Under the pieces are notes generated by a model that did not search any database, was not told the origin of the DNA, and saw only the letters and a list, made by a program, of their open reading frames with translations. From the NCBI GenBank assembly GCA_000320545.1, contig ADNK01002325.1:1-64000 (forward strand): 64,000 nucleotides of DNA. The letters are read 5' to 3'. The position numbers were made by a program, and so were the translations under genes. Source of the DNA: Bigelowiella natans CCMP2755 (taxonomy: Eukaryota > Protista > Cercozoa). Below, in pieces: positions 1,042 to 64,000 of the stretch; position 1 is the first letter of the stretch; the number at the start of each line of letters is the position of its first letter.

Positions 1042-4000
1042 CTACTTTTCATGTGTGACACATTCATGATCGATGACTGTTGACGTACCATTTTGGTCTT
1101 GCTCACTACTATCTTCAATTCTCATCGCTGCACTTGTCTTTGCATCGTCATCACCACCATCGTTCTTGTCTGTTGTTCGCTCAGAAGGTAAGGTGCTTGT
1201 TGCTGCTCCCTCAAACGATGAGGAAGATAATGCACTTGGACATGATGATGATGATGATTTTTCTTCTTGGATGGGTCGAATTGTCGTCTCATTAGTAGTG
1301 TGTTGACTATTTGTCGCCGTTTCGCTGCCGTCTTTATTCGCAGACGACTCTATATTTTTTTCATTATGCAACTTTCGTTGTTGATGATGATGCTGAACAT
1401 CATTTGCAATTGACGGTAAGAGGCTGCTGCGGGCTTGCTTCTCACTGCTGGTTTGTGACAACAGAGGCTGCTTCTTTCTCATTGTTTCTTTACTTGCACA
1501 ATGTTTGCTTTTCGTAATTAAACAGTTAGTCTTCGCTGCAGTTGTGGAAGTTGTGGACGATGATTTAATAGTACGCATTGATTTTATAGATTCTTCTTCC
1601 CTTCGTTTATTCTCTATATCGTTTTTATCAAATAGAGCTTCGGATTGAATCCCTACATCCGAGTAATGCTCTTTGTATTTCTTTGTATTCTGGGTTGAGT
1701 ATTGCTCCTTGTATTTCTTTGTAGTATTCTGAGTTGAGTCGGACTTCTTCACATTTGAAAGATCCTTACTTGGATCGTGGTTGTAAGTCCAATTTCCATC
1801 CTTCCTTTTCCTCCCAAACGTTTCACTGCTACTATTGCTATTGCTACTACTAGTATTACCATTAGTGATAAAAATCTGTTGATTATGACAAAGAGCTTTC
1901 GCTGTTCTGGGTCCATAAGATGTCATAAAGATGTAAAAGTGAGTACTCGGCCTCGTGGTTTGCTGTAGAAACCATTCCATTACTCTTGCTCCAAATCCCT
2001 TCTTGTTCTTATCTCGCCCCACCTTCTTCAATGATAGCGACGACGATGATCTAGGCAATAGCATCATTGGATCCAACAGTTATGTGTCAACAATACATAG
2101 ATCTAGGCAACAGCATCATTGGATCCAACAGTTATGTGTCAACAATACATAGATACTGTACACACACATACACACATACACATCTTATTTTATTATATTT
2201 ATATCTATTTGCATATATGAGAGGGGGTCATTTCAAAAGTAGAATGAATACAGTTTGAAGTCCAACTAGAAGCAGAAAAAGTTGAAGAAGAAAAAGAAGA
2301 AGACAAAGAAGAAGAAAAAGAAGAAGACAAAGAAGAAGAAAAAGAAGAAGTAACCATAATGCTTACTGCTAATATTATTTTTAGAAAACGTGGTTGAGAT
2401 GTAGTTGATGTTCCTTCAGAGATGATGGCAAAGAGAAGAGAAGAATGATGTTATATATCATTCGTCTCTTCTTCCATCAACCTTTCTGAGTACATGATAT
2501 TATGGATGATGAACGTGTGGAGGTTGTACGCTGTGTATGTGATAACAATAATTTTACTGATTATGACGATTCTTGTCATTGATCTTCTTGTTTCCTGCTG
2601 TGTTCTTCTGAAACACACATAATTATCATAGTTGTAATTCAAGTACGATCATCGTAAATATTTTGGTAACAATAGTAATAGGCACCACCTTTGCTGCTGC
2701 TGCTGCTGCGTTGTCTACGCTGCTGCAATTATCATCATCATTATCATCCTCATCATCACCACGCTGCCAGTAGAGGAAAAACTGAAAAGGAGGACTTGAA
2801 GGAAAAGAGCAGCTGTGAACAACATCACAATTATCGTCATTAGATTCCTTATTGCTGCTGGGAAATGCCTCCGCGATCCCAACCACTTCCTCTGGCCCGT
2901 CATTGCCGCTTAGATGGGGGGGGGAGGAGTTTGAGTTGGCGAATGGACTCTTGATGCCGTTTTTGGAAAACTGATTGTAATGAACACAAAGAGTAATTTA
3001 TTATCATTAAGAGCATACTGATTGTAATGAACACAAAGAGTAATTTATTATCATTAAGAGCATACTGATTGTAATGAACACAAAGAGTAATTTATTATCA
3101 TTAAGAGCATAGTTTAATCTGGATAGTAGTAGCGGGAGGAGTCATCATCAGTTGTTAATAATTCATTAACTAAGAAGAAGTAAGTGAGATTCGTGACCTC
3201 CATTAGCAGCAGGGATTCAGCATGTTTGTTGATTGAGTAACGCATCATCGAATTCTGGATTAAATGCCAGTGAGACTCCAAAGGCTTCCAATCCTTCACA
3301 CGAATCTGCGGAGCAATAAAATGTACAGTTGGGTGAGAGAAGTGACGACGTAACTTAAAATGAAACATCTCATATTCGAATTGTTGTTAGTTGGTATTTG
3401 ACATATAGTAGCTAGGAAACCATATATCGTAGCACCACCTGAGCAGGAACAACGTGATCTCGAAGAGAATTAGAATGACCTCCTCCTCCTCCTTTTCCGC
3501 CGCATATAATGTTACCAACACACCATGTTGGGTCTTGCTGGCTGCTATGTTTGTCTAGCCCAACAATACCAATCTCTATTCGGTGTCTGCTATTATTGAC
3601 GGTAGTAGCATCATCGCTATTGCTGCTGCTTTTGTTGTCACCAATTGAAGAGGTGGTAGAAGGACCAGCGATTGCATCATCTTCCATAGAATTCCCTTGA
3701 GCAAATTCTCCTTCTCCTTCTCCTCCACTACCACTACCATCACCACCAACCCTATCATCACCTTTCTTTTCTTCTGTTTTGTCCTGATGATTTTGCTCGG
3801 GGTTTCTTCGTTTTCTCCCTCGTTGAAGTGGCTGTTGTTGTTGTTGTTGTTGTTGTTGTTGTCGAGAATGAGGTGTAATAACAGAAGGGTTCTGTTGTGT
3901 TCTATTTTTCGTCTTCTTCTCCTTTCGTAGCTGTTTGTCTTGACCATCCGTGTCTTCTCTTCTTCTTCTTCTTCTTCTTCTTCTTCTTCCCGCCTCTCCT

Positions 4001-5748
4001 CCTCCTCCTCCTGCTGCTGCTGCTGTGCCGACGATGTGCAAGTCTATTTGGTCTCCTTGCTCAATACCAACTTCCTCAAATGTTTTCTCTGGACTACAGG
4101 AACAAGAGAGAAAGAGAAAGAGAGACAAAATTTATGCGTGATCAACAAATGTTGTATAATTTATTGTTGAGACCTCCAGTGATAGCAGTAAAAACACAGC
4201 TATCATCACTACTAAAATCGTCTAAAGTCTACGTACTTACTCCATGCTCAATCCATCAAAGATAAAGTGACAATACAGCAGATAATCATTGTGTCAAATA
4301 TATAAGTCGATAATATATCGATGATACATGCAAATAAATACACCATACTCGATGATAAAACCATCAAAGATTAGTCGGATCTGATCCGCCGCCACTTGCA
4401 ACCTCTTCGAAAAATTTTTCAACAGCTTCTTGACCTTGAATAACCTAACCGTTGTGTGTAGATGATGCTCAGATAAGTAGCTAGAAGTAGTTACTACAAC
4501 ACAGGGAGACCAAAAACCAAACTCATGAAATATAATCTTTAGAGAAACAGTAGATTCAAAATAATCGAGCGAAAACACAGATGATTGATAACATCGTCGT
4601 CTCTGCGGACAAGGATAATCGGTATCATAACTATTATGATCAGTTTCCTAGAAATGTTCCAATTTGTTGTTAAAACTTGATGTTGCTGTTGTTCGTTCAA
4701 CCTGTTGAGTTTCACCTTTTTACTCGTTTTGGGCTTATCAGCCTCCTTCACAAGAACTACGATTCTAATGATCATGATGATGAGAATAGTATTATCGATG
4801 AATCGAGATTACACAGAAAGACACATGATCATTTATCCAGGAGATTCGCATTTGGCGAGGAATAGGAAATACGTAGAATTCTGTAAAGTGGCGATTTCTT
4901 CGTCACAGTTGTATATGCTGTGTTGGAACGAAGTATCATAGCTTAATTGCAGCGCCACGTTATTTATGTAAAAAATAAGCACAGCATTCGAAAGTACAAA
5001 TAGAGCTCGATTCTACTTTGTATTGTCTTTCCGAGGCATCTTCAATGATTCGGAAGAATTGTGTCCCTTTTTTTGAGGCGGCTGCTGAAGCGCTGTTAAA
5101 CTAGATTTCCTTTTATTTTCCAATGGAGTCCTCCTTTTCTGGGTCGAAGTTCGGGATGATGCGTGGGATTCATTGTTGTCAGCAGCATTAGCTACAGATT
5201 GTAGTCTCTGTTTTGCATAGGGCCACCAGTCCGGTGGGTGACGTAAGTTTTCACGAGGGGAGGGGTAATTAGAGCCCATGCGCTTTATCATTATCTTCCA
5301 AAAGTCTTTTTCATTCATTTTTGCACCTCTTTCCATCTTTAGTATATCTTGGATGTGTTTGTCTATCATCGCCATCAATTCAGGTGATGGTCGCTGCTGT
5401 TCGCGATTTCGTTTCTTTACTCGGGAAGAACCAAGGCTGCTTTCTCGAGGAGAGGATGAAATATCATCTGAAGCTTGCCTCCAGACTAATTTTCCACGTG
5501 CAGCTTCATCCTTGGGATCTTTCCCAAACATTTTGTTACTGAGGATCTGTTTATCATCGTTGGACTCACCAATCTGGAAACGAAACAGAGACAGCAGGAT
5601 TGTCACCAATAATCATCAAATTGTGGCTGTAATCAAGATTTTGCAATGTTATACCCGAGCTCTACTCTTTCCATTCTTTATATCTACAAGTTCCAAGGTA
5701 GCCGAAACCCTAGCAGATATCATCCCGAGTGATATCAACGCAAAGAAG

Positions 5749-5782
<34 letters not shown>

Positions 5783-6732
5783 TCAAACACACATGGAGAG
5801 GGAGGGGGAGGGAAGAGACAGAGAGAGGGAGAGAGGATATATTAGATTGCCTACAACCAGGAATGATTCTTGTAGATCTCCACTTTCATTCCTGTGTGTG
5901 GCTGATAATTATAAGAATCAGCCTGGAATCCACAAGGTTTCCAAATATGATGAGAGAATACTATTCGACCCTGGATGATGACGAGCTAGTCCTGAAGCAA
6001 GTTGGATTCATACTGGGTATATTCTTCTGTGAAGTCCTTTCGTTTAGTCTTGGCACTCTACTTCTCCGACACAGTTTTTTTTGGCGATTTGAATTTTCTA
6101 CCAACAAAAATGAATTCAAGGTCCATTAAATCTAAAAAGAGAGTTTTTCTTTACGTTTTGTGATAGGCTTTTCCGATGATGAAGAGGTTCCTCTCCTGAA
6201 TGAAGAAAACTCGACAGGCTCTTGTACTACAGAATATGTACCCCCGAGAGTCTCTTCCCCGTCTGAGTCGACTTCAGCGGTATATTTCGCTCGTATTAAA
6301 TTCTCGGGAGTTTGCGGCAATAGCCATGTCTTACCATTGTCCCAACACCTAAATATTTCAATTATGGTATTATTAAAAAGGTAGGTATCATCATGCAAGC
6401 CTAAAGGTGGTTTAATACGAACATAGAGCCAAACAATTTGTTAACAAATAGCATGAAATTGTGAAATGCAACGAGATGAGTGTAAATGCAAATATTATAG
6501 ATAACAGTGACTGGTACTCGAGCCTATATCTTCGGGATTCCCTATCGATACTGAGTACCCTTGCATTGTACCATTTCCCTTTCCAGTTGACTGTCAAAAG
6601 AAGAGTATTTCAAACGAGAAGGGAAGGACGACCGAACCGAAATGCACAACCTTGGACATTTTCCATAAATCGAAATTTTGGTCCATGGGAACTGGATGCT
6701 GACGATGAGCTTCGTTTATTTCGACGTTTCAT
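1042..6732 (-). CDS. Multi-exon nuclear protein: N-terminal Tudor/Agenet-like domain, SUMO-like (Rad60-SLD/ubiquitin-like) domain, long low-complexity regions
   Basis: The spliced start MKRRNKRS...KFRFMENVQ|VNWKGKWYNARVLSIDRESRRYRLE..WDNGKTW has a Tudor-like aromatic pattern. KVKKLLKNFSKRLQVAADQIRLIFDGFIIE|PEKTFEEVGIEQGDQIDLHIV is the SUMO-like signature (F.FDG..I....T...L.ME.GD.ID). Long exons match ORFs 5013-5609, 3412-4128 and 1042-2076. Confidence 0.7.
2048..2153. repeat. 52-bp tandem duplication (2 copies) ending at a minus-strand splice acceptor
   Basis: gatctaggcaa(t/c)agcatcattggatccaacagttatgtgtcaacaatacata occurs at 2048 and 2100 with one mismatch. Confidence 0.9.
2970..3110. repeat. 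47-bp perfect tandem triplication ending at a minus-strand splice acceptor
   Basis: actgattgtaatgaacacaaagagtaatttattatcattaagagcat occurs at 2970, 3017 and 3064. Confidence 0.92.
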
Positions 6733-7023
6733 TATCTCGGTCCTGCGCTCCCCACAACAATGATTGATGGGGACCGTCCGGAACCTTCGATGGAGAAATA
6801 GCCCTTGGTAGTGTCTCCCAGGGGTACGGATTCCGAAGATGTCAGAAGTTTTATTAATGCGACATGAATCCATGAATGTCGCAAAGGGAAATGACAGAGC
6901 AACAAAGGCCGTTAAAAAAGAAGATGGGTAGTCAAGAAAGCGACTTATTAAGTAACAATCTTGAAGCGAAGAGCCTCCCGCCAATTTAGTCCGTCCACTC
7001 CCTACTTCGCGTGCTCAGTCACG
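6733..7023. promoter_or_regulatory. Putative bidirectional promoter (~290 bp between divergent ATGs)
   Basis: The ATG of the minus gene is at 6732 and the ATG of the plus gene at 7024. The spacer is CpG-containing and has no microsatellites or palindrome island. Confidence 0.5.
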
Positions 7024-9707
7024 ATGAGGAGGACCCAATCAGAGGGTAAATCCAAAGAAAAATTTCATTCTTGTTCGTAAATATTCATAAATCTCCGATT
7101 GTGGCTCTCACGAGTGCCTCATTTCACAAATTCTCTCCATAAGGTCCAGATTCCTCGGTACCCAGCTCGATTGAAAGGTGCTCGTCTCTCTTAACGCTTT
7201 ATGCCTCCTTTCATAGGCTGCTAATTCTACAATTCTCTATTTAGATGTTTACAGCTAGTTTATGTGTGACACAGGATACGCACTCGACTGGATCGAGTTA
7301 GACGGGCCTCCTTGACGCCCACGGTAAGATGATAGGTTTTCTTCGAGAACGAAGCATGGGCACAGAAGATTTTAATTAACCATGTGGTTCTTTGTGGAAT
7401 AATTCTATGAATGAAAATGTACCAATGTTAATTATCGACAGAAGAAATCGCCCAATGGCGAGAATGGCCACTCGCCATCAACTCGACGCTTGTCGCTATT
7501 GCGAAGTTCTCCAAATGTAAACAACCCCTTCCATGCACTTCCTTACCGACTCAAAATAGTTATTTACGTTCTAATCACTGCAGAAGGCTGAGACGACTTC
7601 TGCTCGTGTTGCCCTCGCGGAACTTGAGATTGCGCAAACCCAGCAGGTAAATTGTTAGATCTAAGTATTGCGGAAGGCTAATCATTCAATGTTATTAGGT
7701 GGAGCACGGCAAACAGATGGACGAATTGATTGCAATCCAAGAGGTCAGTAAATTTTCGATTCTGATTTTCTTTATTAGTAACTGGATTTGTAACATTTAA
7801 AGGGACTTCGAAAGCAAATTGAGTTGCTGAAGTTAGACAGGTATTCATAGACAGAGACCAAGGTTGGTTTAAAATATGATAACAGCATGGAATGGTTTAT
7901 AGGATGACTCAGGCATCTTATCTTGAGAAGCTCCTCTTCAGAATAAACGCATTAAATTTGGAAAAAAGACAACTAGTTGATGCTGTGGAGGAAAGGTTTT
8001 CAACAATGTGCAAAACAACAAATAACTAAACAAACATTAAATTGCACCTATCAGGAATAAAAAACTGCTGGCTGCGATAAGCGCTTCGGTATTTAACACA
8101 CTGATTTGTTCGATTATACATTCCTAACATTGAATTGACAGGACCATAAATTAATGCTCCGGCAACATGAGGAGAAGGTGGAGGTGAGCGCAGTACCATA
8201 GTCTTTTGCTTGCATTTATTTGGATTATAATATGTCTAGATTAAAGCAAAGGAATTGAAGGAGGCAGAAAATCAGCTGGAAAAGGTACCCCAATTCCCCC
8301 TTTAATATTTATTTCGTGCGAATAGATATATTCGAGAAATTCATGAGTTCCTCCAACTCAGGTGGAGAAGGATCTGCATTCCCAACGCGGTGAGCGAGTC
8401 ATTTGGATCCATTGATTGCATAATTTACTTTCTCAACCGACAGAGTTGGCTGAGCTTCGTGGGAGCAGGCTTGCAGCTCAGGTATTGCAAACTAACCCTG
8501 GCAACTCATGTATGGTTCCAAACATTATCATTTGGACAGGCACGCATGATCGAGGACCTCATACGGGAGAGAAAGGTAATCTTAATCCTTTACAATTAAT
8601 GATGACCTTCACTGATGAAAAACGGGTACCAAGGTTGATGGATTAAACCTGGGAGACAGTTTGAAGAAGGTATTGGCTTAAATTTTCTTGATTTCATCCG
8701 AGATAAATCTTATTTATATCCGTTTGTTCGAATCTGTCAAGGATCCCCACCTTAGAATCGAGGGCAGGAATTTCGGTGAGCTTTGACTTTTTTGTTTTCA
8801 AATCTATCTGGCAGCTCTCGATGATTGACTGACTGTGTGCCCGAAATTAATCCACAGATGCTAATGCAGATGTTTCGAATGGTGGCCAACCGCGTCTTAA
8901 ACTCTCTCCAAAATCACCAAGCTCTCCAGCTATCGGACAACAGATGATCGAAGTCAGATATTATTTACACCATTCACAATCATTGTGATAAAATTGAATC
9001 CATCATGATTTCGACGGTATTTTGGTAGGAACTTGAAAAGGAAAAATTGGAAATGATAGAGAAAGAGGTAAATAACACTATCAAAGATCGAAAATTAGGA
9101 CTTTGAAGCAAAATTTAAAATGAGTACATTGTGTTTTACTGATTAGATTGAGCATAAGCGAGCATTAAGGTACAGCTTAGTACACTAAATTATCCAATTT
9201 TAATGGGATATAGAAATTAACAAAATGCTTTACTGTCCTCCCAGGACTCTGTATTCGAAACTGGTTATTGCTTGTAGCGACGACGATGACAATGAGCTCA
9301 AAGTTGAAGCTGTGACCACAAAGTTGACCAAACTTCAAAAAATAAGGAGAGAAGAGTTATAAATCCTGCTGTTTTGCAATCTTGAAGAGGCTAATACTAA
9401 AGAGTGGTTAAAAAATACACGAATTGAACTAAAGTTCAATGGAAAATGTTTCTCTTTCAAACAGGCCGAATGTAGACGCGTCTCAATTACACGAGCTCAT
9501 TGATATTCTCATCTCTCAGAAGCAAGAGCAGGTAAATGTTTATTCAATGCTCGGATTGTCGTCCTCCTTGACCAACATCTTATGCGAAGTATGTTGTTTT
9601 TTCTCCGTTTAGCAAATGCGTACACAGCGCTTGCAAGAACGAGTGGATAAAGGTGAATAAATCTTACGATGAACGCCACATGCATGCGTATTCTGTGTCA
9701 CACATAC

Positions 9708-9747
<40 letters not shown>

Positions 9748-10270
9748 TACACACACACACACACACACACAAAATATTAAAATATAAATAATGTATAAAC
9801 ACATTATACAAATTCAATTACTACATGTCTGTCAGCATTGGAAAGCTCTGCAAAGAACGCTAAGGTATATTGTTATTCTGAGATAACGAAAACAAATGAG
9901 AACAAAAGCCTAAATCCTTAAACTGAAATCTGCTGTTCGTTTGCAGGAAATGGATAATTGCCAAATGTCAATAAACGAGCTCAGTGCTGCAATGGTATGA
10001 GAAAACGTGAACAATCTGTCCAGCTTTTTAATAATTTCAAGCACCCATGCAACAATTTTCATGGTTCTTGACCATACTCAGATCGAGAAGAATAAGGCTC
10101 TTACGAGCGTGGAATGCGAGTTATCAGCGGTTATAGTTCTCTTTTACGTAATTGTGATACACTAATACACTTGACATCATTTCGATAAGGCCAAGGACAG
10201 AGTAGCGGAAGGAGAGGCTGCGAAAGATGAAGTGGTACAGTGTACAAGTACACACACACACACATACACA

Positions 10271-10309
<39 letters not shown>

Positions 10310-17881: not shown

Positions 17882-17940
<59 letters not shown>

Positions 17941-18239
17941 GTTATATGGTTTTATTCGTCAGAAGATGATTTCGATAATGAGTATCGGACTAAAACAAGC
18001 AGTTATTATTTTCAGCAGTAGCATACTACTACTACCACGATTACCACTACTACTAATGCTGATGCTACTACTTCTACTATTACTACGATATTGTGAGTGG
18101 GTGAGTGAAACGAGAAGTAAAGCAGCAGCACCTGTACTGTACTATACATAATATGTGATTAGAACACGTTGCATGAGCTTGCAGTCAGGCTGAAAGAATC
18201 GGAGGTGATGCATAGGAAAGAATAGATTACCTATAATTT

Positions 18240-18322
<83 letters not shown>

Positions 18323-46338: not shown

Positions 46339-47102
46339 TGCTATCGATAGTCAGGTTGAGGAAGCAGCTTACGGATGGATACGCACAGCATTTGGATGGT
46401 GTCAGACAAACAAAGTTGCTAAGCACACTGCAGCAGCAGCAGCAGCAGCAGCAGCAATTCCTCAAAAGAGGGGTTGTGTCAATGCGAGCGACGATGAGCT
46501 CCTCCAGATGGAAGTCTCGAGGGATTTTTCCCACAAGTTGCATTTTATCCGTGGCCATCCTTCTCATTTAAGAAGAGGCATGGATCGACTAGCCAATGCA
46601 GGACTTACGAGTACAGTGGTTAAATTCCAGGCAAAGGTGCTGATAGTGATCATGTTGATGATGATCACAATGTGGGAGATTAACGAGGGGGAGGAAGGGG
46701 AGTTATGTAGTAATTGTGTCATAAGTGTTTGACGTTGGTGTGCTCGTGAAGCTTAGAACCTGTCATTATTCTCAGGATGGAGAGATCGAAGTATATGCAC
46801 TAAAATACAACAAGGGCGAGGATCGGTATAATGAATTCCTTGTCATTATCATTAAGAAACAACTTCTTCAGAATAACAAGCAGTAATTTTTCATGGAATT
46901 TTCTCTATGCTTCAGGCTAGAGCTGAGGCACTACGTCGACGGACGGTACATCTAAATTGCACAAAACGAGGAGGAAACGAACATAAAATCATACCGAGCG
47001 CTCATAATATACTTTGAAAAGGTTTCGAAATCTAGTCCAGTCGTTGCGATTCATCGTCAAAGAAATGGTAGAAACTTCTCTTCAGAGTAGATAGTAGTAG
47101 TT

Positions 47103-47133
<31 letters not shown>

Positions 47134-50584: not shown

Positions 50585-50931
50585 TTCAAATTGACAATGT
50601 AGCTTGAAAGATAGTTTCGCTCTCCGATGTCCCTTTTGTGTTACTCATCAGAATTGTAACTCCTGTCTCAAACAGGATAATTATGGAAAACAATCGAGAT
50701 TATCCCTGAGCGACAAATAATATTCAGCTCGTTCCAACACAGGCCTCATAAAGATTTTTTTTTTGTTACAGTCAGAACACTTACAAACTGTTACGTGCAT
50801 TTTGTCCACTTACAATATTGCATGCATTTTGTTCACAGCGACAAGCATAATTGGGATTGTTGGGTACAAATATGTCATAGAAGTCATAGGCTTTCATCAT
50901 TGCACCCTCCATCTATTCGTACTTGCAAATC

Positions 50932-52608: not shown

Positions 52609-52609
52609 A

Positions 52610-53180
52610 AAGATCTGTGTCTAGCTAGCTAGATTTGAAACATGACCTCGTGCCATTTCTGAAGCAAATGTGCATTGCAGATGTCACATTTAGTTTTGAG
52701 AGTACTAGAACAAGGTGAATGGCACATTCAATCTAGATCTCACATGGTAAATGCTTGATGCTACAAGAGGCAGACGTTTTGACGCAAGTCAAAACGTACG
52801 TGTCATGCGCGTGGGCAACAACATATGAGACCTGTTTTTGTTCGATGAGATGAACCACATGTGGTGTGCTGTCATCAGGTTCTCAACATCCTCCAAACAC
52901 ATCGCATCAGCTATAAGCACAAAACGTTGCGTTTTTGCTGTACATGCTCAATTTGTTGGATGAAACATTCCATCAGCACTAGAGTAGAAGACGTTACGGC
53001 TATGCACAATGAGTGTCACGTTGAGCTATGTGTACTGTGATCACAAATCGCTTGAGAGAGGCGTTTTCCTATCATTAGCTATGACGCTTTCTTCACACGT
53101 GAGATGCAATAGCAATCCCACAGCTAAAACTAGAACCATGACAAATTTCAATTGCAAGTTGTTGCAACGTACGTAACAAA
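52610..53180. other. Palindrome-rich convergent-gap island (I6)
   Basis: tctagctagctaga directly after the stop codon; atctagatct, acgtacgt, cacatgtg, cacacgtg, ttgcaa. Confidence 0.7.
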
Positions 53181-53203
53181 AATGAGTTCTCCATGCAAAA
53201 TTT

Positions 53204-56200
53204 TCAAGTTCTCATGAACGAATCTTCACTATTCTTTTGATCTAAAATGGGTTTCGAAGGCTGATCCTCCTCCTTGTTTTTGGGTGTGTTTAAAGGGGTT
53301 CCATTCGTCTCGCATAAACTCTAAAATTAGAAATATCTGTATTTGAGTTTATGTCAAAAATTGTTGGATATCATACATTCTACAATTATCATCACCCTAT
53401 TTCTGAGGTTCATTAAGGGCGAAGGATGTAGTGGTGGCTTTTGGATCCGTTCTAGATTTTCGGAAGAATCGTAACAGAAAACCAAAATGATGCGTGATAT
53501 CAGTTCTAATTTAATGGCTGCCACGCTTAAGACACAAAAGCACACACACACACACATATCTAGGTAAATAGCGAAATAGTAGTAGTAATGTGGAAATCGA
53601 AGTCAAAGAGAATGTCTTGTCGATTTGTATGATTGCCGCAGATATATATCTAAAACGTAGCCACCCTGATGGCAACAATCTTAACACATACCCTTACTTG
53701 CATCACACTTAACCAGAGCTCTGACGGAGGAATGACGGATTGTCTCTGAACTGTATCCCTGCTTTGGGCCTAAATTTCCTGAATATCATGATCATGATGA
53801 CGAAATATGAGCATTCATCATTTATGGAAATATTATATGAAAACACAAAGATCAAGTTTTGTTAGATGCTTTTACCACTGTATCTCCGCTCTCTCTCTGT
53901 GGCAGAGGTTGATGAATTGCCTAGCATCGATATAAATATGGTATTCTTAGTAATGAGCTTACATCTTTATATTCCAGCACATATCTGCATTAGTTATCTG
54001 ACCATAATGTACAATGTCCATGCAATTGAAACATGTGTAGTGTATTTTCTTTCGTTACCGCTCCCCCGCCTCACTGCTCCAGAAGACATCTCAGAATCGC
54101 TTGACCGCCTAGACGAATTTGTCGTTCTTCGTGCCAAAGCATCGGGCGAGCTACAAATAAAAACATACAGCTGATAAACATAATTATGGAAAAAGAGAAG
54201 GTAGAGCCAACAATAAATGCATCAGCTGTTACGCACTACTGCCGTATTTACTTGATCAACACCAAACTGCCCGCCCATCGGGTATCAAGTCGTATAGAAA
54301 TGTATGTTTTTGTTGGTTGTACTTGTTCTGTTCTCTACGTTATATTTGCTCTACTTACATTACCCTTTGGATGCTACCAGTACATTTGAAATCCTCGTCG
54401 TTGCATTCGTGAGGTTCGATGGCGTTCGCGACATAGGGTGTGGTTCTGCAGCTGTATAGTAGTTGCGCTGATTTTCACGCAGATAGATCTCCTGTCTGAT
54501 ACCTGACAGGAATGAGGAAGAGAGTCAAACATAGATTCGGATATGCATATTTGAGATTAAATTATAGTAATAAAAAATACGACTCAAATGTACATTATTC
54601 AAATTTCATTTATTGTTGGTCAGTAATGATAACATTATACTACTCCTTCCTTCTACCCCTCTCTCTACTGTCGTAGTAGTACTTTCTCGTGCTGCGATGT
54701 TCATGGTGCGTAGATCATCTACTTTTCTGTTGCCTTGAATAATTTAGATTATTGACCATCAATACTATGATATCCAATATGGATTTCGCCGCCATACTAC
54801 TAATACTGCAACTACAACTTGTGGCAATGCTAATCGTGTGTGTACCTGTGACAAACGACTATATACATATAGAATGTGATGACTGTAAAAGATAATGGCA
54901 GTAATATTCGAATGGTGAAATCTCAATTCTCTTGTCTCACATGCTTTTTTTTTCATCCCTTGAAACCGAATTAAACACCACCAGAATACTGTAAAATTCA
55001 AGAAATATATCAGATTTAATGCAAAATGAGGGGTAGAATGAATATGGTTTTTACTTAGTGCAAACGAGATTCCACAAAAGAAAACAAGGATAGCCCCCAC
55101 AATTAAAAACGTTGTGTCTTGTAAGATTTTCTTTGTATCCGCATCATCCTTCGCAGGGTATAATAAGGCTGGGCTGAAAGTCGGAGCATAGGAACTGTCG
55201 AGATACCCAACAAGAAGAAACATAATATGGTGATGTTGTACATGAAGAGGAATCAGATCTTAGATAATGCAAAGTAATCCTTCACCACCTCGGAGGCGGT
55301 GTGGGTGTGGAACCCTGCTCGTTGCCTGGATTGTCTTGAGTTGGCGCTATCGTCGGTGATTTCGTCGCAGCAGAAACTTCTTCCCAATGAGGTCCTGTAT
55401 GTGTTTGAGCATTTGGATTTCTCATTGATGCTATCATTTTATAAGCACAAGATTTCAAGCAGAAACATTTATTTGTTGTAAGAATCTTCATTGTAATTTT
55501 GTTGAAGGGACAAAAGACACTTTAAAATTGATGATACACCGTATGCTACTTTTGCTGCGTGTGTGTCAGTTGAGATTCGATAGGATAGCACCTTGATACG
55601 TACAATCCAGGCAGATATCATCACTTAGCCACCATCTTGGGGTCATGACAACCATACTTTGATGATGTGCGTTACGGTAGTTTTGTGCTAACGAGGAGCA
55701 ATTGAGGCACTTTCCACCATCAACTACCCACGGAAAAGAGGCACTTCCTGTCCCTGCAGTTCCCCCCCCTGTTGCTGTCTCTTTATATGGTAACCAAACT
55801 TGAGTAGGTTTTATTAAGTAGCAGGACGAGTAGAAGATCGGATCAGAAGGGTCAGTAGAAAGGACAAATCTGAGAAAACACAAAAAGGAGAGTAAAAGCG
55901 GTATTCGTTGTCATAGAGTAGGGGGGGGAAATAGCATTATAATTAATTAATTAATTAATTACTGTGGAGCTCCATTATTTTCACGTTGTTCCTGCGCTTC
56001 TAGTTCCACACCATAACATATCTTTTCAAAAATTCAAAAACAACAACATAATAATAATACTCATATTTATTATTTTGCAGGCTAGGATCAAGATACTCTT
56101 TATACAGGTGAAAGGTATTGAATGTGCCAAACCATGGAAGATGATTTAGGAGGTTCTTTTCGAAAGACATCAACACCACTTAAAGCAAGGATTCTATTTT

Positions 56201-56873
56201 GGCCTTAATTTTAATATTACCATCAAAACAAATCGATATAGTCATGAATCTATCGATGAGTTTAAAACATGCATAAATGTTAAAAGGAAAATATCAATGT
56301 CATCTATCTCTATCATCGGTTTCTCCTTTAAAATTCTCATCATCATCATCATCATCATTATCATCCTCTCACAACTACTGTTACTACTACTGTTACTACT
56401 ACTTACTACTCTCCGTACTACCCAGAAGCTGTATCCGAACAAATCTAGCCTTGACACCACCACAATTTACATTCAAAGTGCACAACGAATCCTATGGAAA
56501 TAAGAAGCAACAAATAACCTCGAAATTACAATAAGAGACTTGTGTTATCATCAATAAGAATATCGAAACCATACCACGAAATTACTACACTTGATACTAA
56601 TTCTACTACTACTTCTACTACTACTACACTACTATTACAGTCTACCATACTAACGAATACACATTCATCCCGTTGCAGACTCGCTGAATCAGACCTTAAA
56701 CAGATAATCTTCGCAATACGATATCTTACTAATTTCCCCACAAATATGCCTGATGACATGAGAATTTTTATGGGCAGGATATGAAGTTGAGGGGTGGGGG
56801 GGGGGGGGGGGGCAGAAGGAAGATAGAAGAGTAGTAGTAAGTGGTAGTAGTTGAGTAGTAGAAAATAGTTGTC

Positions 56874-56906
<33 letters not shown>

Positions 56907-59610
56907 ATACCGATTATGGTCGTCATATCGATTCGTAGCGTTAGAGAGGTATATCAGCACTCCTGTGTCAGGATGAGAAGTGTTCAATGCTCCGGCAAAA
57001 GATACCTTGGAATCCCACGTGCTTCTCGGTGATACCTGCATAATGAGAACGACAATAAAAATACAAACCTAACCATATATACCAGGAGAAACGATTTGTA
57101 TTACTTGTGGTGCACCCCCACCCTGGCGATTAGTAACGTAAAGAAAAGGGTCATGGCCTGCAGATACACCCCTGATGAGGCTCATGCAGATGTTATTCCC
57201 TCCACCCTGAAAGAACCAACTCATAGCACACGTGTACGTAGAATGCAATCCTGGGTAATTATCAGTAGATTTAGGCTGGATCCCTGGAAGATGTACACTG
57301 ACAACTCCTATTTCTTCTAAACTTCGATCATCGCCTCCTCCTAGATCACGTTCCCAGAATGCTGCTATATTTGAGGAGGCATGTGATTTGGAGGTAGTAT
57401 TATCGGCCCTCGGTACCCATGCTTGTGGAAAGTGTGAAGTAAACCATTCGATAGAGATCCAGTGAATATCGGGACATGCGCGGTACACGTAGTGTCTGTT
57501 TGCTCCATTTGTGTAATCTAGATATCTGGATGATTGTTCTGTGGGCTTTAGTGTGAGTTTTCCGTCAATTACATTGACGAAGAAAGTAATGCTTTTATCT
57601 TGGTCCTCCTCTAATAGGAACTTGGAGTTTTCAGCAACACAACCATCGTATCCAATCCCCCCTTCACCGACATATACTGTGACTTTATACACTCCTGTAG
57701 GCACCTCAATGCTCCATTCATTGACGGTGCCGTCTGTACATGTTGTATTCCACGCATTTCTCTCTACTTTCCCAGTTCTATAATCTCCAATGTATCTTCC
57801 TACCTGCTGAGAAACCAAGCCGTCGCTGCTAACACCCATGCCCATCGGACATTTCCAACCGAATCTAGACGAATAGTTTCCATGATGATACTCATGACTG
57901 TCTTGACCAAAAAGTGACCCGATATCTGGCGTCCAAGGTGCTGTCAAATTGATGTACACTGGGGAGCCTTTAAAGGCAGGTGCTATTGGTTGGAAAGAGA
58001 TGAAGTGGGAGATATCGTTCTTCTCATTGATAGTAGTAGTAGTAGTAGTAGTAGTAGTAGCAGGGGGGGGCTTCCGCTCATAGTACCTCCAATCAAGATG
58101 TTCCTCTAAATGAGATCCAAATTCGCAAATACGAAACTGATGGTTCTTCCCGGTAAATGGTGTATTATCAGACGATGATATCAATGCTGAGTCATAAGAT
58201 GCCGAGTCCCTCCTCCTCCTCCATGCAATTGCATTGCAGTTCTTAGTGTTTGCACAAAGGACTGTTGCTTCCTTGAAGCTGCTACCATTAATGTCATTCC
58301 CTCTGGAGCAAAGTCTCATTTCCAGAATGACTGTCTTGTTCAGCCATTCCTCCCAGTTATCAATCGAAGTTGCCTCTTTACATCCTTCGCTACTGACCTT
58401 CATTAGGTTTGCATTATTGGCCATATGGATGTAGTCTGTAGGATAGGTATCTTTCCATGAGTTTGGATTCGTTAAATCCCATGGCCCATTGCTTATGTTC
58501 AAGTATATTGCAGGGTTAGTGAGGTCATTACGTACAGGGACGGCATTCACGCCAAAGTCTCCCGAAAAGGTCGGAGACCGTGCTGCTGAAGCCCAAGCCG
58601 TCCTTACATCGAGTACACAAGAACTAACATCTTTGGATGCATCGTGCATAGCCCCGACCAGTCGTTTTGGTTTTGTAAATCTGCAGTGGTTGATGATCTG
58701 AACAGAGTTATTTAAGAACTTCTTGCCATATATTTCATTCTCAGGGACTTGAAAAGGGAAGCCCAGTACATCAATAGCATCTGCATACCCCTCCCAGAAC
58801 CAGTGAACAACGAATTGATTTTCGTGCGTATGATGATGAGTGGGAATGGGGATGCAGAAGACATCGTGGTCGCCATGATTGCTCTCCAAAATTTCAAATC
58901 GCAATGCCCCGATGATCCAAGGATACACATTAGATCGATGGAATATGAACTTATCAGTAGATATAGCTTCCTCTTTGTACTTATATAAAATCCTACTTGG
59001 GTAGTCAGGGTGTTCACAGTAATCCGCATCGAATGTCGAAACTGGGCCTACGAAATTTGCACCGCCGCTACACCTGCTCTCCTCGGCACAATGGTGTAGA
59101 CGTGGGTATCGATATGCCATGTTTGCGCTTGCAGGAGCTTGGTCGATGTAATCATCTACCCAAACTGCGTATTTGAGAAGGTCATAGGTGTAATGTTCAT
59201 TTGATAAAGCAAAAATCACGAATCGATGATGTCCACTATGAGCAGAAGAGACCTATTGTGTGAAATGAAAGCTGAGTCATCATCATCATCATCACGTTGC
59301 ACAAGTCCGCTTCCTGAGCTCGACATACCAACACGAAATAATACCTTTATTGCTGTTTTCTGCCCAGGTCCAAGTTGTGAATGAATAACCCCAGGCATAT
59401 GTGGAATGAACGGTTTGGTGCCAGATGCAGCAAGCTGGGATCGTGATGGAGATAAGATCCAGTTGTGGCTGCTTGTACACGGCGCCAGAGGGAGGAGGAT
59501 GCAGAAAACTGATATGATAATAACTAAAATAATGAGGGCGTCCCCAGGCCGGGGACGAGAATATTGTAGAAGGAAAAGTATGATTAATGAAGCCACTTTT
59601 TCTATCGAGG

Positions 59611-59652
<42 letters not shown>

Positions 59653-59712
59653 ACTACCTCCAAAGAAGGACATGGATAGCTGAGAATACTTACAAACACT
59701 CGAACCTAGCAT
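53204..59712 (-). CDS. Large type-I membrane protein with an N-terminal His-brace LPMO-like domain and carbohydrate-binding-like modules
   Basis: A hydrophobic leader ..LIILVIIISVFCILLPLAPCTSS is followed by HNWILSPSRS. Then GQKTAIK|VSSAHSGHHRFVIF and FVVHWFWEGYADAIDV. The 716-aa exon 57069-59219 also contains FGW..WSIEVPTGVYKVTVYVGE. An S/T/P stalk (SPTIAPT, YAPTFSPA) precedes the TM segment FLIVGAILVFFCGISFAL. Both ends are approximate. Confidence 0.7.
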
Positions 59713-60029
59713 TAACAAATATCAACTACCCGCAAGTTATAGTGAAGCAATAAATCTTGTAAATGTTCTCACTCGTTCCACACCTTCACTCAGCCTGAAC
59801 AATATCGCACTGTGCGCTAAAGAATAAGCTTCGACTCTGTCCCCCGGAGCGCTCCGAATTCTATTTTAGTATCTGGATAATCCTACCTACTTCCCTCCTC
59901 CTCCTGCTCCTCCTCCCCCCCCTTTCTCCTCCTCTTCCTCCACATACGTGAATGATTAGAGTTTAGAGCAGCAGAATGTGGCAGTTTTCCTCTCCTCCTC
60001 CCTTCCTTCTTCCTTCTTTACTTTGATGC

Positions 60030-61220
60030 TGCTCCTACTACCATCCTCTACCTCCCGTGCGATACAAATCAGCGACAGACTTTCGAATATGTCTCATTCC
60101 AAAAAAGGCTTCGCTTTTTGGATCAAACTGTGTTTGTAGGAGATTCTTGGGGCTGGACTCCGGGATCCGTTTCAAGGTGAGAGTGCTGGATGGAAAACGA
60201 GGGAAATGTTCTCAAATTATACTGTGCGACATGCATAGGTTCATGTCGTAATCTGAGTATCGCAACACACGCTGTTCAGTAACGCAATGGCGTATCTACC
60301 TTTTTAGAGGGCAGCGTCCAGGGTTCATAAGTACCTGTCTCTTCCTTAACAATTGCATTGCTGCCTATTCGAACCCCGTGGGGGGTTTCCCTTCTTCCCA
60401 TATGCCTTCTGCTGCTACAAATGGTACCGTTATAGCTAGTATTTCTTTAAATAATATCAAACAGGACGTATAATTTATTTCATCCAAACTCGTAGTACCT
60501 CAGAATCTATCCTGTTTCTCAGACAGTCAAAGCACATCCATCCGACCCAAAAGTGATGTAAGTATAAGGGTTAGGGTTAGTGAACGTCTCAAATAGCTTA
60601 TATTTGATTGTGGATTTCAAGATGAGAGCAGTGTGTGTGTGTGTGTATGTGTGTTGTGGTAATGCCATGCATTCGTTTATATGATAATATTATTGTCCTT
60701 TTTAGTAAATACCGGGAAGCTTTGAAGGAATTCAATGAAAAATGGGAAACGAAGAGATTTAAAGTAAGTGAAATACACGTATGCACAAGTTAGTACTTTT
60801 CTCTCCTCCCTTTCTCTCTCTCTCTCTGTCTCTCTCTCTCTCACACACACACAGACGCACACACACATTGGTGTAGACGTATAGAGAAGTATGCAAATGA
60901 TCACTGATCTCATCATCATAATAAAACCCCTTTGCTCTCACCTGTACCTATCTCTCTATACAAATTTGTACTATTTCTAGAGATTCTACAGGCAGCAGCT
61001 TCGAAAAGAAATATTTCCCAGAAAGAAGAAACGAAGAAATCCTGTCATACATCCACACAGATGCATCACCTTTCTCCTTGTATCCACATTTTTTTAGGGG
61101 GGAAATGAACAATCGATGCACTAATAAGAACTATCACCACAAAGAGATCACTAAATCATAGCATATATACAGAGCAGAGCATAGAGACACGCCTAGATTT
61201 ATAAATATATTACATTATAG

Positions 61221-62279: not shown

Positions 62280-63110
62280 TAATATAGTCCGTCGTGGCTT
62301 GTAGAGCAAGCACTAGTTATTGTTTGTGTGAGAGCCTAGCGCATCGTATGGCATCACTGACGTGTAACGAAAAAATATAATGCACACCACTGTTTTCATG
62401 ACTGCATCTGATCATCTGTTGTGTGATATCTATCTGTCGCGATCGATCGCTTCGAGCGCGTACTACACACTACTTATATACTAGATTACGTTGTCGCGCC
62501 ACTACATACACAGACATACAAGCGAGCTAGCGAGGCCCAACGTACACAACCTCGTCGACATGGTAGCGCACGTGTTTAGATTTGTAGCTCTGCAATGATA
62601 ATCAATGCTAGTCGAGATTCAGGTTGGGTTTTGGCAGCTGTGCTAGCATGACTTGATAAGGCGAGCTAGATTGCCCAGCTGCTAGCATGTCGCACATTTT
62701 GCATGTAGGTTGCGAAACACTGAAAACTAGTGCAATGCGCTTGCACCTTGCATCGCGTGCATTTTTTCTTGCGCACTAGCAATGCACACATTGTGCACAC
62801 TACAATATCACAATATGATAGTCCACCAAGCATTGTGAACCGCATCAGCATGAAGCAGGCGCAATCGTGCTAGCGTGCCATCCTGGTTCGCAACATGATC
62901 TAGATGATGCTCATCAGTCATGTTCAGTAGTTCAATCCACCTGCACTCTAGCACTAGCTAGGCAGTGCTAGAGTGCTAGAGTGCGGAATCGTCACTACTG
63001 GGGTCTAGCTAGCTAGGAGTTATGAAAGCTTGAGGTTTGTCACATATGCCTCTGGCATAGCTTGCCTGAAAATGTCAAGGTCGCTGATGCGATTTACACG
63101 CGCAAGCGGT
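62280..63110. other. Palindrome-rich convergent-gap island (I7)
   Basis: cgcgatcgatcgc, gctagcatg, ctctagcactagctaggcagtgctagagtgctag, gtctagctagctagg. Confidence 0.8.
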
Positions 63111-63560
63111 ATAACAGCGTATTTTACCTTAAATTAGGTGGAAGATTTCGAAATGTGTTACGTATTCGCAGCTGATATACCAGAGTGTTAGCGGGACGCT
63201 ACGATTGGTGCCGTATAAATGGCGTGCAGGCTAGGCAAAAAGGAAATATGGATATCCATACACGGTTAAGTTTTGCGTTTGCTACAACAAGCGCTGAGAA
63301 AGATTCAATTGTTGAACATGCGCGGAAGATTATTAAGGCACGTACTGTTTACAATACAGGTAGCGAACAGTATAATTTCCCTCTAAATCTTTGGCCATCT
63401 TATTTTCGTTTTGTTTTCTTGGATCTCCCAATTTATGTGGTTCTCTTTTCCTTTTTACTCTTCTTTTTAGCCGTTTTTTCTCCTTTCTTTTTTGCCCTTC
63501 ATATAATGTGCATCCAATCGTCAGGGCAAGAAGGACCCTTTGCATACTTTTTTGCTGTTT

Positions 63561-64000
63561 CTACTCCCCTCCCTTGCCCTTTACGTTTTTCTTCTTTTTT
63601 CCTGACCGCGCTCTCTTTTTTTTTCCTTTAGCTGAGCTGCTGCTCCTAGTTCCTTGACCTGATGTTAGGTGACAATGTTTTTTAAAAATGTCCACCGCTC
63701 TCAGTGTTAAAAAAATAAATGAAACTAAGATCCGATTGATAATAATGTATGTGAAAGTGAAGATGAAAGATGGTGTCCAAATCATAAAATGCTAGATGCA
63801 TTTCGAATTTCAACACGTCAAGTCAAGAAAATTCAATCGTGTGCTCGTAGGGTCAAATTTTGTGTTCGGAAGACATGATTTTCTGTGCTTTTGTGTACAT
63901 ACAGTATTTGGCCTCCAAAGCAGCAAGAAAACCACGGCCTTCAGCTTCCCTTCGAGCGTGTTTACTTCGTATCATCTCTAGTAGGCCTCCCTCTCCCTAA
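63561..64000 (-). CDS. DNAJC9: 3' end of a DNAJC9-like J-domain co-chaperone gene (partial)
   Basis: Spliced ..GEGGLLEMIRSKHARREAEGRGFLAALEAKY-T|GT-QGTRSSSSAKGKKKRARSGKKKKNVKGKGGE*. This matches the DNAJC9 C-terminal pattern L..I..R...FL..LEAKYC plus a Lys-rich tail. The J domain is outside the window. Confidence 0.6.

What the first reader, a model, noticed from the sequence alone, without database searches (positions are those of the whole stretch)
1042..64000. Strict alternation of gene orientation across 15 consecutive genes (chromosome built from divergent pairs)
The order is -,+,-,+,-,+,-,+,-,+,-,+,-,+,- with no co-directional neighbours. Under random orientation this has probability (1/2)^14, about 6e-5. 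Several head-to-head ATG spacings are short (~290 bp at 6732/7024, ~375 bp at 29179/29554, ~350 bp at 50584/50932, <=230 bp near 42700), implying shared bidirectional promoters. This is the opposite of the unidirectional clusters of kinetoplastids and dinoflagellates. It suggests the unit of organisation is one promoter plus two genes, bounded by the palindrome islands.
Basis: partly seen in the sequence, partly recalled or inferred. Interest (0 to 1): 0.8.

Follow-up and report, generated by a model that had tools for sequence, protein, structure and literature searches.

The report
Alternating gene orientation in Bigelowiella natans

Summary
The window is the start of Bigelowiella natans scaffold 60 (G000:C1412:1-64000).

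Merging same-strand exons by eye makes alternation automatic, so (1/2)^14 does not apply.

I checked gene boundaries independently with MMETSP/JGI transcript contigs and catalogue proteins, mapped with my own spliced aligner. Seven units have transcript or catalogue-protein support. An eighth, Sec24-like, rests only on weak Pfam domain order. Together these eight form a run from 29.5 to 60.4 kb that alternates strictly: Sec24-like +, Sar1 -, P0003 +, P0005 -, P0008 +, g9 -, g10 +, P0001 gene -. That is 7 of 7 junctions, p = 0.008.

EukProt catalogue numbers imply 12 models between 0.7 and 60.4 kb. At least 10 of 11 junctions alternate (p about 0.006), if my strand guesses for the unseen models are right.

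Several reader models fail:
- "Gene 2" (7-20 kb, +) has no support.
- "Gene 3" is composite.
- "Genes 12 and 13" overlap the 5'UTR exons of the gene running 52685-60358.

Convergent 3' ends meet in CTAG-rich islands, which look like insertion-scar fields rather than designed boundaries. Shared promoters are untested and genome-wide generality is only suggested. The scan's first readers flagged the same pattern in at least 8 other windows. The closest precedent is Ectocarpus and the brown algae, where more than 60% of neighbour pairs alternate.

The parts
719..6873 (-). Gene 1, a single transcription unit. The MMETSP protein P0007 (665 aa) has its CDS from 6011 to 2208 in 11 exons. The JGI/EukProt model P0011 (1228 aa, P009413, fgenesh C_600001) runs 6873 to 719 in 17 exons and includes the 341-aa ORF at 1045-2067.
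   Evidence: Spliced alignments give 660/665 and 1228/1228 identities. Transcript contigs L027 and L028 map from 6821 to 881/922 and run unspliced through 2972-1089.
7000..22100 (.). It is unresolved: unique, AT-rich DNA with no island and no database support.
   Evidence: Pfam found nothing. The profile search and the contig scan were negative for ORFs 13168-13401 and 19258-19770. Only short repeats occur elsewhere in the genome. Base composition equals the complement of intron composition. No strict intron candidates lie at 7-17 kb, with a weak + excess at lax thresholds.
22101..23100 (.). CTAG/CATG/GCATGC-rich island.
22819..23665 (-). Catalogue gene P0006 (120 aa, 23306-23665). The adjacent downstream ORF 22819-23337 carries the same repeat motif of about 55 aa.
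   Evidence: Exact look-up found it with EukProt as the source.
25601..26650 (.). Weaker CTAG/CATG island. By analogy with the verified islands it would mark a convergent junction.
26442..29179 (-). Ab initio '-' gene (Z) with ATG at 29179, head-to-head with the Sec24-like gene. It is unverified.
   Evidence: My own gene model gives 12 exons and 1452 nt. Intron candidates run 0 (+) to 1 (-) at the strict threshold and 1 to 4 at the middle threshold. No protein match was found.
29554..34995 (+). Sec23/Sec24-like COPII coat gene.
   Evidence: All Pfam hits are below the curated cut-offs but lie in domain order on the + strand. Sec23_trunk profile positions 25-77 match the ORF at 30489-30752. Positions 132-197 match the ORF at 31091-31798. 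Sec23_helical matches weakly in the ORF at 33405-33842. The ab initio start is 29554. I read the stop by eye from the sequence.
35051..36000 (.). Strong CTAG island lying exactly between the Sec24-like stop and the Sar1 3' end.
35905..37099 (-). Sar1 GTPase gene. CDS 36698 to 36129 in one coding exon, with a 5'UTR intron at 36902-36701.
   Evidence: Pfam Arf, E = 3e-52. Transcript contig L001 maps at 99% identity.
38005..39176 (+). Gene encoding P0003 (149 aa, CDS 38052-38498). It is unspliced, with a 3'UTR of about 680 nt.
   Evidence: Exact look-up succeeded. Five MMETSP transcript contigs, L022-L026, map collinearly at 99.9-100% identity.
39101..40250 (.). Strong CTAG island between the 3' ends of the P0003 and P0005 genes.
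40407..42474 (-). Gene encoding P0005 (424 aa, JGI aug1.60_g15734, EukProt P009420), 11 exons.
   Evidence: Spliced alignment 424/424. Name.
43034..48421 (+). Gene encoding P0008 (687 aa, EukProt P009421), 24 exons.
   Evidence: Found by a multiplexed profile search. Spliced alignment 687/687. Name.
49054..50584 (-). g9, a tail-anchored coiled-coil protein gene with several exons.
   Evidence: MMETSP protein P0030 maps from 49428 to 49054. Homologue P0035 and its transcript L031 map spliced from 50572 to 49064.
50887..52757 (+). g10, a coiled-coil protein gene. ATG at 50932, last exon 52276-52605.
   Evidence: Proteins P0028, P0029, P0031 and P0034 map here. The intron-retaining transcript L030 is collinear with 50887-52757.
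52685..60358 (-). Gene 11. P0001 (1168 aa) has its CDS from 59712 to 54363 in 14 exons. There are 5'UTR exons at 60333-60306 and 60176-59782, and a 3'UTR with three introns reaching 52685. The JGI model P0015 (1296 aa, P009424, fgenesh C_600011) runs 60358 to 53712.
62401..63250 (.). CTAG island. Flank purine skew (0.529 on the left, 0.413 on the right) fits a + gene to the left and a - gene to the right. Both flanking genes are unverified.

Best explanation
This part of the Bigelowiella natans nuclear genome is laid out as genes that alternate in orientation. Divergent pairs have 5' ends 0.3-0.9 kb apart. Their 3' ends converge on the 3' end of the next pair, either overlapping or separated by 0.6-1.2 kb of spacer.

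Transcript contigs and catalogue proteins show that each tested strand block is exactly one transcription unit.

Most likely cause (inferred, not shown). In this compact, intron-rich genome transcripts run on past their coding ends. One example is the g10 and P0001 transcripts, which overlap by at least 73 nt. In a tandem arrangement such read-through would invade the next promoter. Rearrangements that leave neighbours on opposite strands are therefore retained, promoters cluster in short divergent spacers, and convergent spacers are the only free DNA. That free DNA collects CTAG insertion footprints and so forms the 'palindrome islands'.

The 6.9-29.5 kb third of the window remains unresolved.
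For: The organism is identified through a cluster member named EP00466_Bigelowiella_natans / jgi Bigna1.

Single-unit proofs:
- P0001 covers 59712-54363 in 14 exons, splicing out the stop at 57069 that ends the long ORF. Transcript L029 spans 60333-52685.
- P0007, P0011 and transcripts L027/L028 show that 0.7-6.9 kb is one unit that includes the 341-aa downstream ORF.
- P0008 covers 43034-48421 in 24 exons.
- P0005 covers 42474-40407.
- P0003 transcripts cover 38005-39176.
- Sar1 transcript covers 37099-35905.
- g9 and g10 are confirmed on - and +.
- Sec23/24 domain pieces lie in order on +, though all are below Pfam's curated cut-offs.

No hidden genes in the verified run. EukProt numbers rise with position: P009413 at 0.7 kb, P009420 at 40.4 kb, P009421 at 43.0 kb and P009424 at 53.7 kb. 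This leaves exactly two catalogue models between P0008 and P0001, which are g9 and g10, and none between P0005 and P0008.

Statistics. The run gives 7 of 7 alternating junctions (p = 0.0078). Across the 12 catalogue models at least 10 of 11 alternate (p = 0.0059), given my strand guesses for the unseen models.

Islands. They sit at verified 3'-3' junctions. In an arbitrarily chosen 200-kb contig, C1130, island density is also 1 per 8 kb. There, islands fall in 13 of 22 predicted convergent junctions, 2 of 21 divergent and 8 of 30 tandem.

Overlapping convergent transcripts. L030 ends at 52757 and L029 ends at 52685. One Trinity transcript, Transcript_31068, carries ORFs of both genes.
Against: - A third of the window (6.9-29.5 kb) has no transcript or protein support beyond P0006.
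- Whichever two of the three candidate genes there are catalogued, the JGI catalogue must contain one same-strand adjacency, if my strand guesses hold.
- The flank left of the 22.1-kb island has a '-'-type purine skew of 0.456. That would put two '-' genes in tandem there.
- My crude ab initio predictions on contig C1130 give only 59% alternating junctions (43 of 73, p = 0.08). That predictor both fragments genes and misses them.
- The window was picked because it looked alternating, so there is selection bias.
- No expression, TSS or chromatin data were available.
- The read-through explanation is inference only.
Confidence: 0.75

Rival explanations
1. Artefact of reading. The reader merged every run of same-strand exons into one 'gene', so alternation is guaranteed. 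The true genes are randomly oriented, with many tandem neighbours hidden inside the long models.
For: The logic holds for any intron-rich genome read by eye. Exons here are tiny (median 79 nt) and codon bias is weak, so tandem boundaries cannot be seen in raw sequence.
Against: Every strand block that could be tested against transcripts or full-length proteins proved to be a single transcription unit. That covers gene 1, Sar1, P0003, P0005, P0008, g9, g10 and the P0001 gene. Catalogue numbering leaves no room for extra models between P0005 and P0001. The one strong tandem candidate, the ORF at 1045-2067 downstream of P0007, lies inside the same transcript and the same JGI model.
Confidence: 0.1
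2. Local chance. Orientation is close to random genome-wide, or only mildly biased as in many compact genomes, and this window is simply a lucky run picked out of hundreds.
For: More than 800 windows of this genome have been read. A run with p about 0.006-0.008 is expected several times by chance. My ab initio predictions on an unselected 200-kb contig alternate at only 59%.
Against: First readers flagged strict or near-strict alternation independently in at least 8 other windows. These are unchecked notes. CTAG islands occur once per 8 kb in both the window and contig C1130. Wherever they were verified they mark convergent junctions. The local catalogue density is 12 models in 60 kb, so that island density implies about one convergent junction per two genes. 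Random orientation would give one per four.
Confidence: 0.15

Closest known systems
Opposite-strand neighbour bias in Ectocarpus and other brown algae. Cock et al. 2010 is cited here only as quoted in bioRxiv 10.1101/2024.02.19.579948.
   Same: [quoted passage not shown] Intergenic intervals are shorter between divergent pairs. In Ectocarpus this goes with shared nucleosome-depleted regions at divergent TSSs. In both cases the genome is an intron-rich algal nuclear genome.
   Different: In brown algae the alternating proportion is reported as 'can be greater than 60%'. Here it is at least 10 of 11 locally and 7 of 7 in the verified run. B. natans is a rhizarian and unrelated to brown algae. 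Its convergent spacers carry CTAG insertion-footprint islands. A genome-wide figure for B. natans was not obtained, and no paper in the searchable library reports one.
Bidirectional (head-to-head) promoter gene pairs, as described in mammals, yeast, chromerids and others (for example eLife 2015;4:e06974).
   Same: Divergent partners have 5' ends less than 1 kb apart. The values here are at most 314 bp, 559 bp and 905 bp.
   Different: In those genomes head-to-head pairs are a minority class among mostly tandem or random neighbours. Here nearly every gene in the verified run belongs to such a pair. Shared regulation was not tested.
Unidirectional polycistronic gene clusters of kinetoplastids and dinoflagellates (Nat Genet 2021;53:618, listed).
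   Same: Gene orientation is non-random at chromosome scale.
   Different: The polarity rule is the opposite. Those genomes have long same-strand runs with rare strand switches. This window switches strand at essentially every gene.

Membership tests
Alternating-orientation genome architecture (Ectocarpus type) | The proportion of adjacent gene pairs on opposite strands is significantly above 0.5. | tested here: met
   Met locally only. The verified run gives 7 of 7 (p = 0.008). The catalogue models give at least 10 of 11 (p = 0.006), given my strand guesses for the unseen models.
Alternating-orientation genome architecture (Ectocarpus type) | The bias holds genome-wide. | tested here: inconclusive
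   Island density is 1 per 8 kb in an unselected 200-kb contig, and islands are enriched at predicted convergent junctions. My ab initio genes there alternate at only 59% (p = 0.08). The genome annotation was not available to the tools.
Alternating-orientation genome architecture (Ectocarpus type) | Divergent intergenic intervals are shorter than tandem ones. | tested here: inconclusive
   Divergent gaps are 0.3-0.9 kb and convergent gaps range from an overlap of 73 nt to 1.2 kb. No verified tandem pair exists in the window to compare with.
Bidirectional-promoter gene pairs | The TSSs of two divergent genes lie less than about 1 kb apart. | tested here: met
   g9/g10 transcript ends are at most 314 bp apart. 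Sar1/P0003 transcript ends are 905 bp apart. P0005/P0008 ATGs are 559 bp apart. Contig ends are only bounds on the true TSSs.
Bidirectional-promoter gene pairs | A shared regulatory region or co-expression of the two genes. | not testable with these tools
No expression or chromatin data were available.
Unidirectional polycistronic clusters | Long runs of co-directional genes. | tested here: not met
   No verified co-directional neighbours were found. The only candidate, the ORF at 1045-2067 next to P0007, is one transcript.

The most novel reading that the evidence does not exclude
The whole B. natans nuclear genome (about 91 Mb) may be organised as near-strictly alternating genes, with more than about 85% of neighbours on opposite strands. 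That would far exceed the roughly 60% reported for Ectocarpus. Divergent spacers would hold all promoters, and convergent spacers would be the only free DNA, marked by CTAG insertion-footprint fields. This would be an extreme genome architecture that has gone unreported, and it would point to strong selection against tandem read-through.
Probability: 0.4. Interest if true: 0.8.

Novelty: new member of a known kind. Interest (0 to 1): 0.6.

Why it matters
Gene order and orientation in eukaryotes are usually close to random. Mild excesses of head-to-head pairs are common, and brown algae reach about 60% alternation.

A large, intron-rich nuclear genome in which nearly every neighbour is on the opposite strand would be a natural experiment. 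It would bear on transcriptional interference, bidirectional promoters and termination. It would also explain why mobile-element footprints pile up only at tail-to-tail junctions in this alga.

The test is cheap, because the public Bigna1 annotation only has to be counted. There is a practical use too. Alternation and the CTAG islands are handy priors for re-annotating B. natans, whose tiny exons defeat ab initio gene finders.

Tried and rejected
- Codon-usage and Markov coding scans and a self-trained gene-finding HMM of my own. Codon bias is weak and the median exon is 79 nt. The self-trained model fragmented the verified P0001 gene. With lenient settings it invented a 55-exon gene at 9-16.6 kb. 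I used it only as weak support.
- Pfam on about 55 single ORFs. Only Sar1 was found at full strength, plus Sec23/24 pieces below the curated cut-offs.
- PDB sequence search of one Sec24-region ORF: no match.
- Multiplexed profile of six unrelated exon ORFs in the search for homologous proteins. Even the built-in control was not recovered, because low-complexity words filled the candidate list. That search is uninformative. The same trick worked with six ORFs in the search of protein representatives and with three ORFs in the search for homologous proteins.
- Two metagenome-contig scans with ORFs 13168-13401 and 49054-49473 found nothing. These blanks therefore mean nothing.
- Exact look-ups of 16 ATG-to-stop ORFs were negative.
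- Exact contig look-ups of P0001, P0007 and P0008 found nothing on record.
- Candidate-intron counting per strand. It is strand-specific only at a strict threshold and fails on the Sec24-like gene at lax thresholds.
- Paralogue searches for two ORFs found only the ORFs themselves.
- Literature searches found no report on B. natans gene orientation. The 2012 genome paper is not held in the library.
- Rejected idea: the 341-aa ORF at 1045-2067 as an independent tandem gene. It lies inside the gene 1 transcripts and the JGI model.
- Rejected idea: the islands as designed terminators or boundaries. They look like footprint fields.
Exons were searched by reference only.


Full report
WHAT THE WINDOW IS

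The window is eukaryotic: about 40% G+C, GT-AG introns, and no tRNA or Rfam hits. It is G000:C1412:1-64000 of a 91.4-Mb assembly in 3736 contigs. An exact-sequence look-up returned a cluster member named EP00466_Bigelowiella_natans_P009420 (jgi/Bigna1/141026, aug1.60_g15734). Later look-ups returned further Bigna1 names. The organism is therefore the chlorarachniophyte alga Bigelowiella natans, and the window is the start of JGI scaffold 60. Its first gene is fgenesh model C_600001.

THE LOGICAL PROBLEM WITH THE OBSERVATION

A reader without tools can see only strand blocks. If every run of same-strand exons is called one gene, orientation alternates by definition, so (1/2)^14 is meaningless. 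The real question is whether each block is a single gene. That needs boundaries fixed independently of the reading.

Ab initio methods could not answer it. Verified exons have a median length of 79 nt and introns a median of 132 nt. Coding bias is weak. My own self-trained gene finder fragmented one known gene and, with other settings, invented a 55-exon model.

I relied instead on MMETSP/JGI transcript contigs and on catalogue proteins held in the protein collections. I mapped these onto the window with a protein-to-genome spliced aligner that I wrote and with blastn.

The protein searches are capped. I therefore searched several unrelated exon ORFs at once, as one profile, after checking locally that exact matches would still score well. 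This worked. It failed, where the control was not recovered.

VERIFIED TRANSCRIPTION UNITS

- Gene 1 (-). P0007 is an MMETSP complete ORF of 665 aa. It maps from 6011 to 2208 in 11 exons (660/665 identities). The JGI model P0011 (1228 aa) maps from 6873 to 719 in 17 exons. Transcript contigs L027 and L028 run from 6821 to 881/922.
  - The 341-aa ORF at 1045-2067 was the best candidate for a hidden tandem gene. It lies inside these transcripts and inside the JGI model. It is a 3'UTR or alternative-isoform exon, not a separate gene.
- Sec23/24-like gene (+). Trunk-domain pieces and a weak helical-domain piece lie in the right order on ORFs between 30.5 and 33.8 kb. All these hits fall below Pfam's curated cut-offs. 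The ab initio ATG is at 29554, and I read the stop at about 34995 by eye. This is the weakest link in the run.
- Sar1 (-). CDS 36698-36129. Transcript L001 covers 37099-35905 and shows one 5'UTR intron.
- P0003 (+). 149 aa. Five collinear transcript contigs cover 38005-39176.
- P0005 (-). 424 aa, 11 exons, 42474-40407.
- P0008 (+). 687 aa, 24 exons, 43034-48421.
- g9 (-). P0030 and the homologue P0035, with its transcript L031, map spliced from 50572 to 49054.
- g10 (+). P0028, P0029, P0031 and P0034, plus transcript L030, cover 50887-52757.
- P0001 gene (-). 1168 aa, 14 exons, 59712-54363. Splicing removes the stop that ends the 727-codon ORF. Transcript L029 covers 60333-52685, with two 5'UTR exons and three 3'UTR introns.

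IS THERE ROOM FOR HIDDEN GENES?

EukProt numbers for the B. natans proteins rise with position in the window: P009413 (gene 1), P009420 (P0005), P009421 (P0008) and P009424 (P0001 gene). P0005 and P0008 are therefore adjacent in the catalogue. Exactly two models lie between P0008 and the P0001 gene, and g9 and g10 account for them.

Six models lie between gene 1 and P0005. Four of these should be Sec24-like, Sar1, P0003 and P0006. P0006 is a 120-aa catalogue protein at 23306-23665 (-). That leaves two more catalogue models somewhere in 6.9-29.5 kb.

STATISTICS

From Sec24-like to the P0001 gene, eight consecutive genes alternate at all seven junctions, so p = (1/2)^7 = 0.0078. Seven of the eight have transcript or catalogue-protein support. 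Sec24-like rests on sub-threshold Pfam hits.

For the 12 catalogue models from 0.7 to 60.4 kb, I considered every way of choosing two of the three candidate genes in the unresolved third: a + gene at 7-22 kb, a + gene at 24.4-25.6 kb, and a - gene at 26.4-29.2 kb. Each choice gives exactly one same-strand adjacency. That is 10 of 11 alternating, and P(at least 10 of 11) = 0.0059. The strands of those candidates are my guesses, not observations.

They still rule out a pure reading artefact for this stretch.

'Gene 2' (7024 to about 20000, +) has nothing behind it:
- Pfam found no domains.
- There is no protein or transcript match for its best ORFs.
- There are no paralogues.
- Its base composition is almost exactly the complement of verified-intron composition. 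On the + strand it reads A .337, C .172, G .196, T .295. The complement of verified introns would read A .339, C .172, G .188, T .301.
- No strict intron candidates occur on either strand across 7-17 kb. At the same threshold, verified genes mostly give one candidate per 0.8-3.8 kb, though g10 gave none.
- Lax thresholds give a weak + excess, but the classifier is unreliable at those settings.

'Gene 3' (about 20000 to 29179, -) is composite. It contains the P0006 gene, whose repeat motif continues into the ORF at 22819-23337. It also contains two CTAG islands, at 22.1-23.1 kb and 25.6-26.65 kb.

'Genes 12 and 13' sit on the 5'UTR exons of the P0001 gene.

THE 'PALINDROME ISLANDS'

Eight stretches rich in CTAG, CATG and GCATGC occur in the window. 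They lie at about 0.25-0.8, 22.1-23.1, 25.6-26.65, 35.05-36.0, 39.1-40.25, 48.6-49.0, 52.35-52.9 and 62.4-63.25 kb.

Four lie exactly between verified 3' ends on both sides. A fifth lies at the 3' end of gene 1.

In contig C1130, an arbitrarily chosen 200 kb, there are 25 islands. That is also 1 per 8 kb. Left flanks tend to be purine-rich and right flanks pyrimidine-rich (Wilcoxon p = 0.007). Islands fall in 13 of 22 predicted convergent junctions, against 2 of 21 divergent and 8 of 30 tandem.

Earlier follow-ups in this scan read these islands as fields of one 8-base insertion footprint: CTAG plus a 4-base target duplication. I checked that claim:
- Window: 39 of 129 island CTAGs are NNNN-CTAG-NNNN, against 0 of 121 outside islands.
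- C1130: 123 of 339 inside islands, against 6 of 318 outside.
- The chance expectation is 0.4%.

The islands therefore look like debris collecting in the only unconstrained spacer, not designed boundaries or terminators. They still serve as gene-model-independent markers of convergent junctions. One island per 8 kb, at a local catalogue density of 12 models per 60 kb, means roughly one convergent junction per two genes. That is the ratio expected under alternation. Random orientation would give one per four. This is indirect evidence that the pattern extends beyond the window.

MECHANISM

Shown:
- The geometry of the pairs.
- The short divergent spacers (at most 314, 559 and 905 bp).
- Convergent transcripts that abut or overlap. 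g10 reaches 52757 and the P0001 gene reaches 52685. A single Trinity transcript carries ORFs of both genes.

Inferred:
- Termination is sloppy enough that a tandem neighbour's promoter would suffer read-through.
- Arrangements that place 3' ends against 3' ends and promoters against promoters therefore persist.
- Divergent partners may share a nucleosome-free region, as reported for Ectocarpus.

None of these inferences could be tested here.

COMPARISON WITH WHAT IS KNOWN

A tendency for neighbours to lie on opposite strands is documented for Ectocarpus and the wider brown-algal clade. The alternating proportion there 'can be greater than 60%'. Divergent intervals are shorter, and divergent TSSs share nucleosome-depleted regions (bioRxiv 10.1101/2024.02.19.579948). 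Chromerids show an excess of close head-to-head pairs (eLife 2015;4:e06974).

I found no report of this for B. natans in the searchable library. The 2012 genome paper is not held.

I therefore file this as a new member of a known kind. The local degree is striking, and it may or may not hold genome-wide.

VERDICT

There is real alternation, a partly wrong gene list and invalid statistics. First readers flagged the same pattern in at least 8 other windows of this genome. None of those notes had been followed up when I looked. The decisive test is a simple count over the public Bigna1 annotation.

Noticed in passing
window:29554-37099: Two COPII components are convergent neighbours. A Sec23/24-like coat gene (+) and the Sar1 GTPase gene (-) are separated only by a CTAG island of about 0.9 kb.
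   Followed up: partly
window islands (35051-36000, 39101-40250 and others) and L002-L021 (G000:C1130:1-200000): Inside the CTAG-rich islands, 30-36% of CTAG sites are flanked by a 4-base direct duplication (NNNN-CTAG-NNNN): 39 of 129 in the window and 123 of 339 in C1130. Outside the islands the counts are 0 of 121 and 6 of 318. This agrees with the 'insertion scar' reading of earlier follow-ups. The commonest duplicated targets are CTAG and CATG.
   Followed up: partly
window:719-2972: Gene 1 has alternative 3' ends. The MMETSP protein P0007 stops at 2208. Transcripts L027 and L028 run unspliced through 2972-1089. The JGI model splices into the 341-aa S/T/K-rich ORF (2050-1089) and ends at 719.
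   Followed up: partly
window:52685-54362 and 50887-52757: The P0001 gene has a 3'UTR spanning about 1.7 kb of genomic DNA with three introns. Its end overlaps the 3' end of the convergent gene g10 by at least 73 nt. A Trinity transcript (Transcript_31068) carries ORFs of both genes.
   Followed up: partly
window:22819-23665 (-): The catalogue protein P0006 and the ORF just downstream share a repeat of about 55 aa (…SSTGR…WNFFQSSLKGY…NQRSELYNFG…EEF…). They are probably one repeat-protein gene that the catalogue truncates. There is no Pfam match.
   Followed up: no
window:7100-17000: About 10 kb of unique AT-rich DNA whose + strand composition is the complement of intron composition. It has no CTAG scars, no strict intron candidates and no database support. 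Its nature is unknown.
   Followed up: partly
window:40250-40365 and 3-326: Long compound microsatellites, (TA)n(TG)n(GA)n, lie just past the stop of the P0005 gene. A hexanucleotide repeat at the left end of the window reads as (NP)n on one strand and (GL)n on the other.
   Followed up: no
L010-L012 (G000:C1130:88700-104100): Seven consecutive '-' ab initio gene predictions cover 15 kb without any CTAG island. This is either one giant gene or a genuine tandem array, and it is a good place to test for exceptions to alternation.
   Followed up: no
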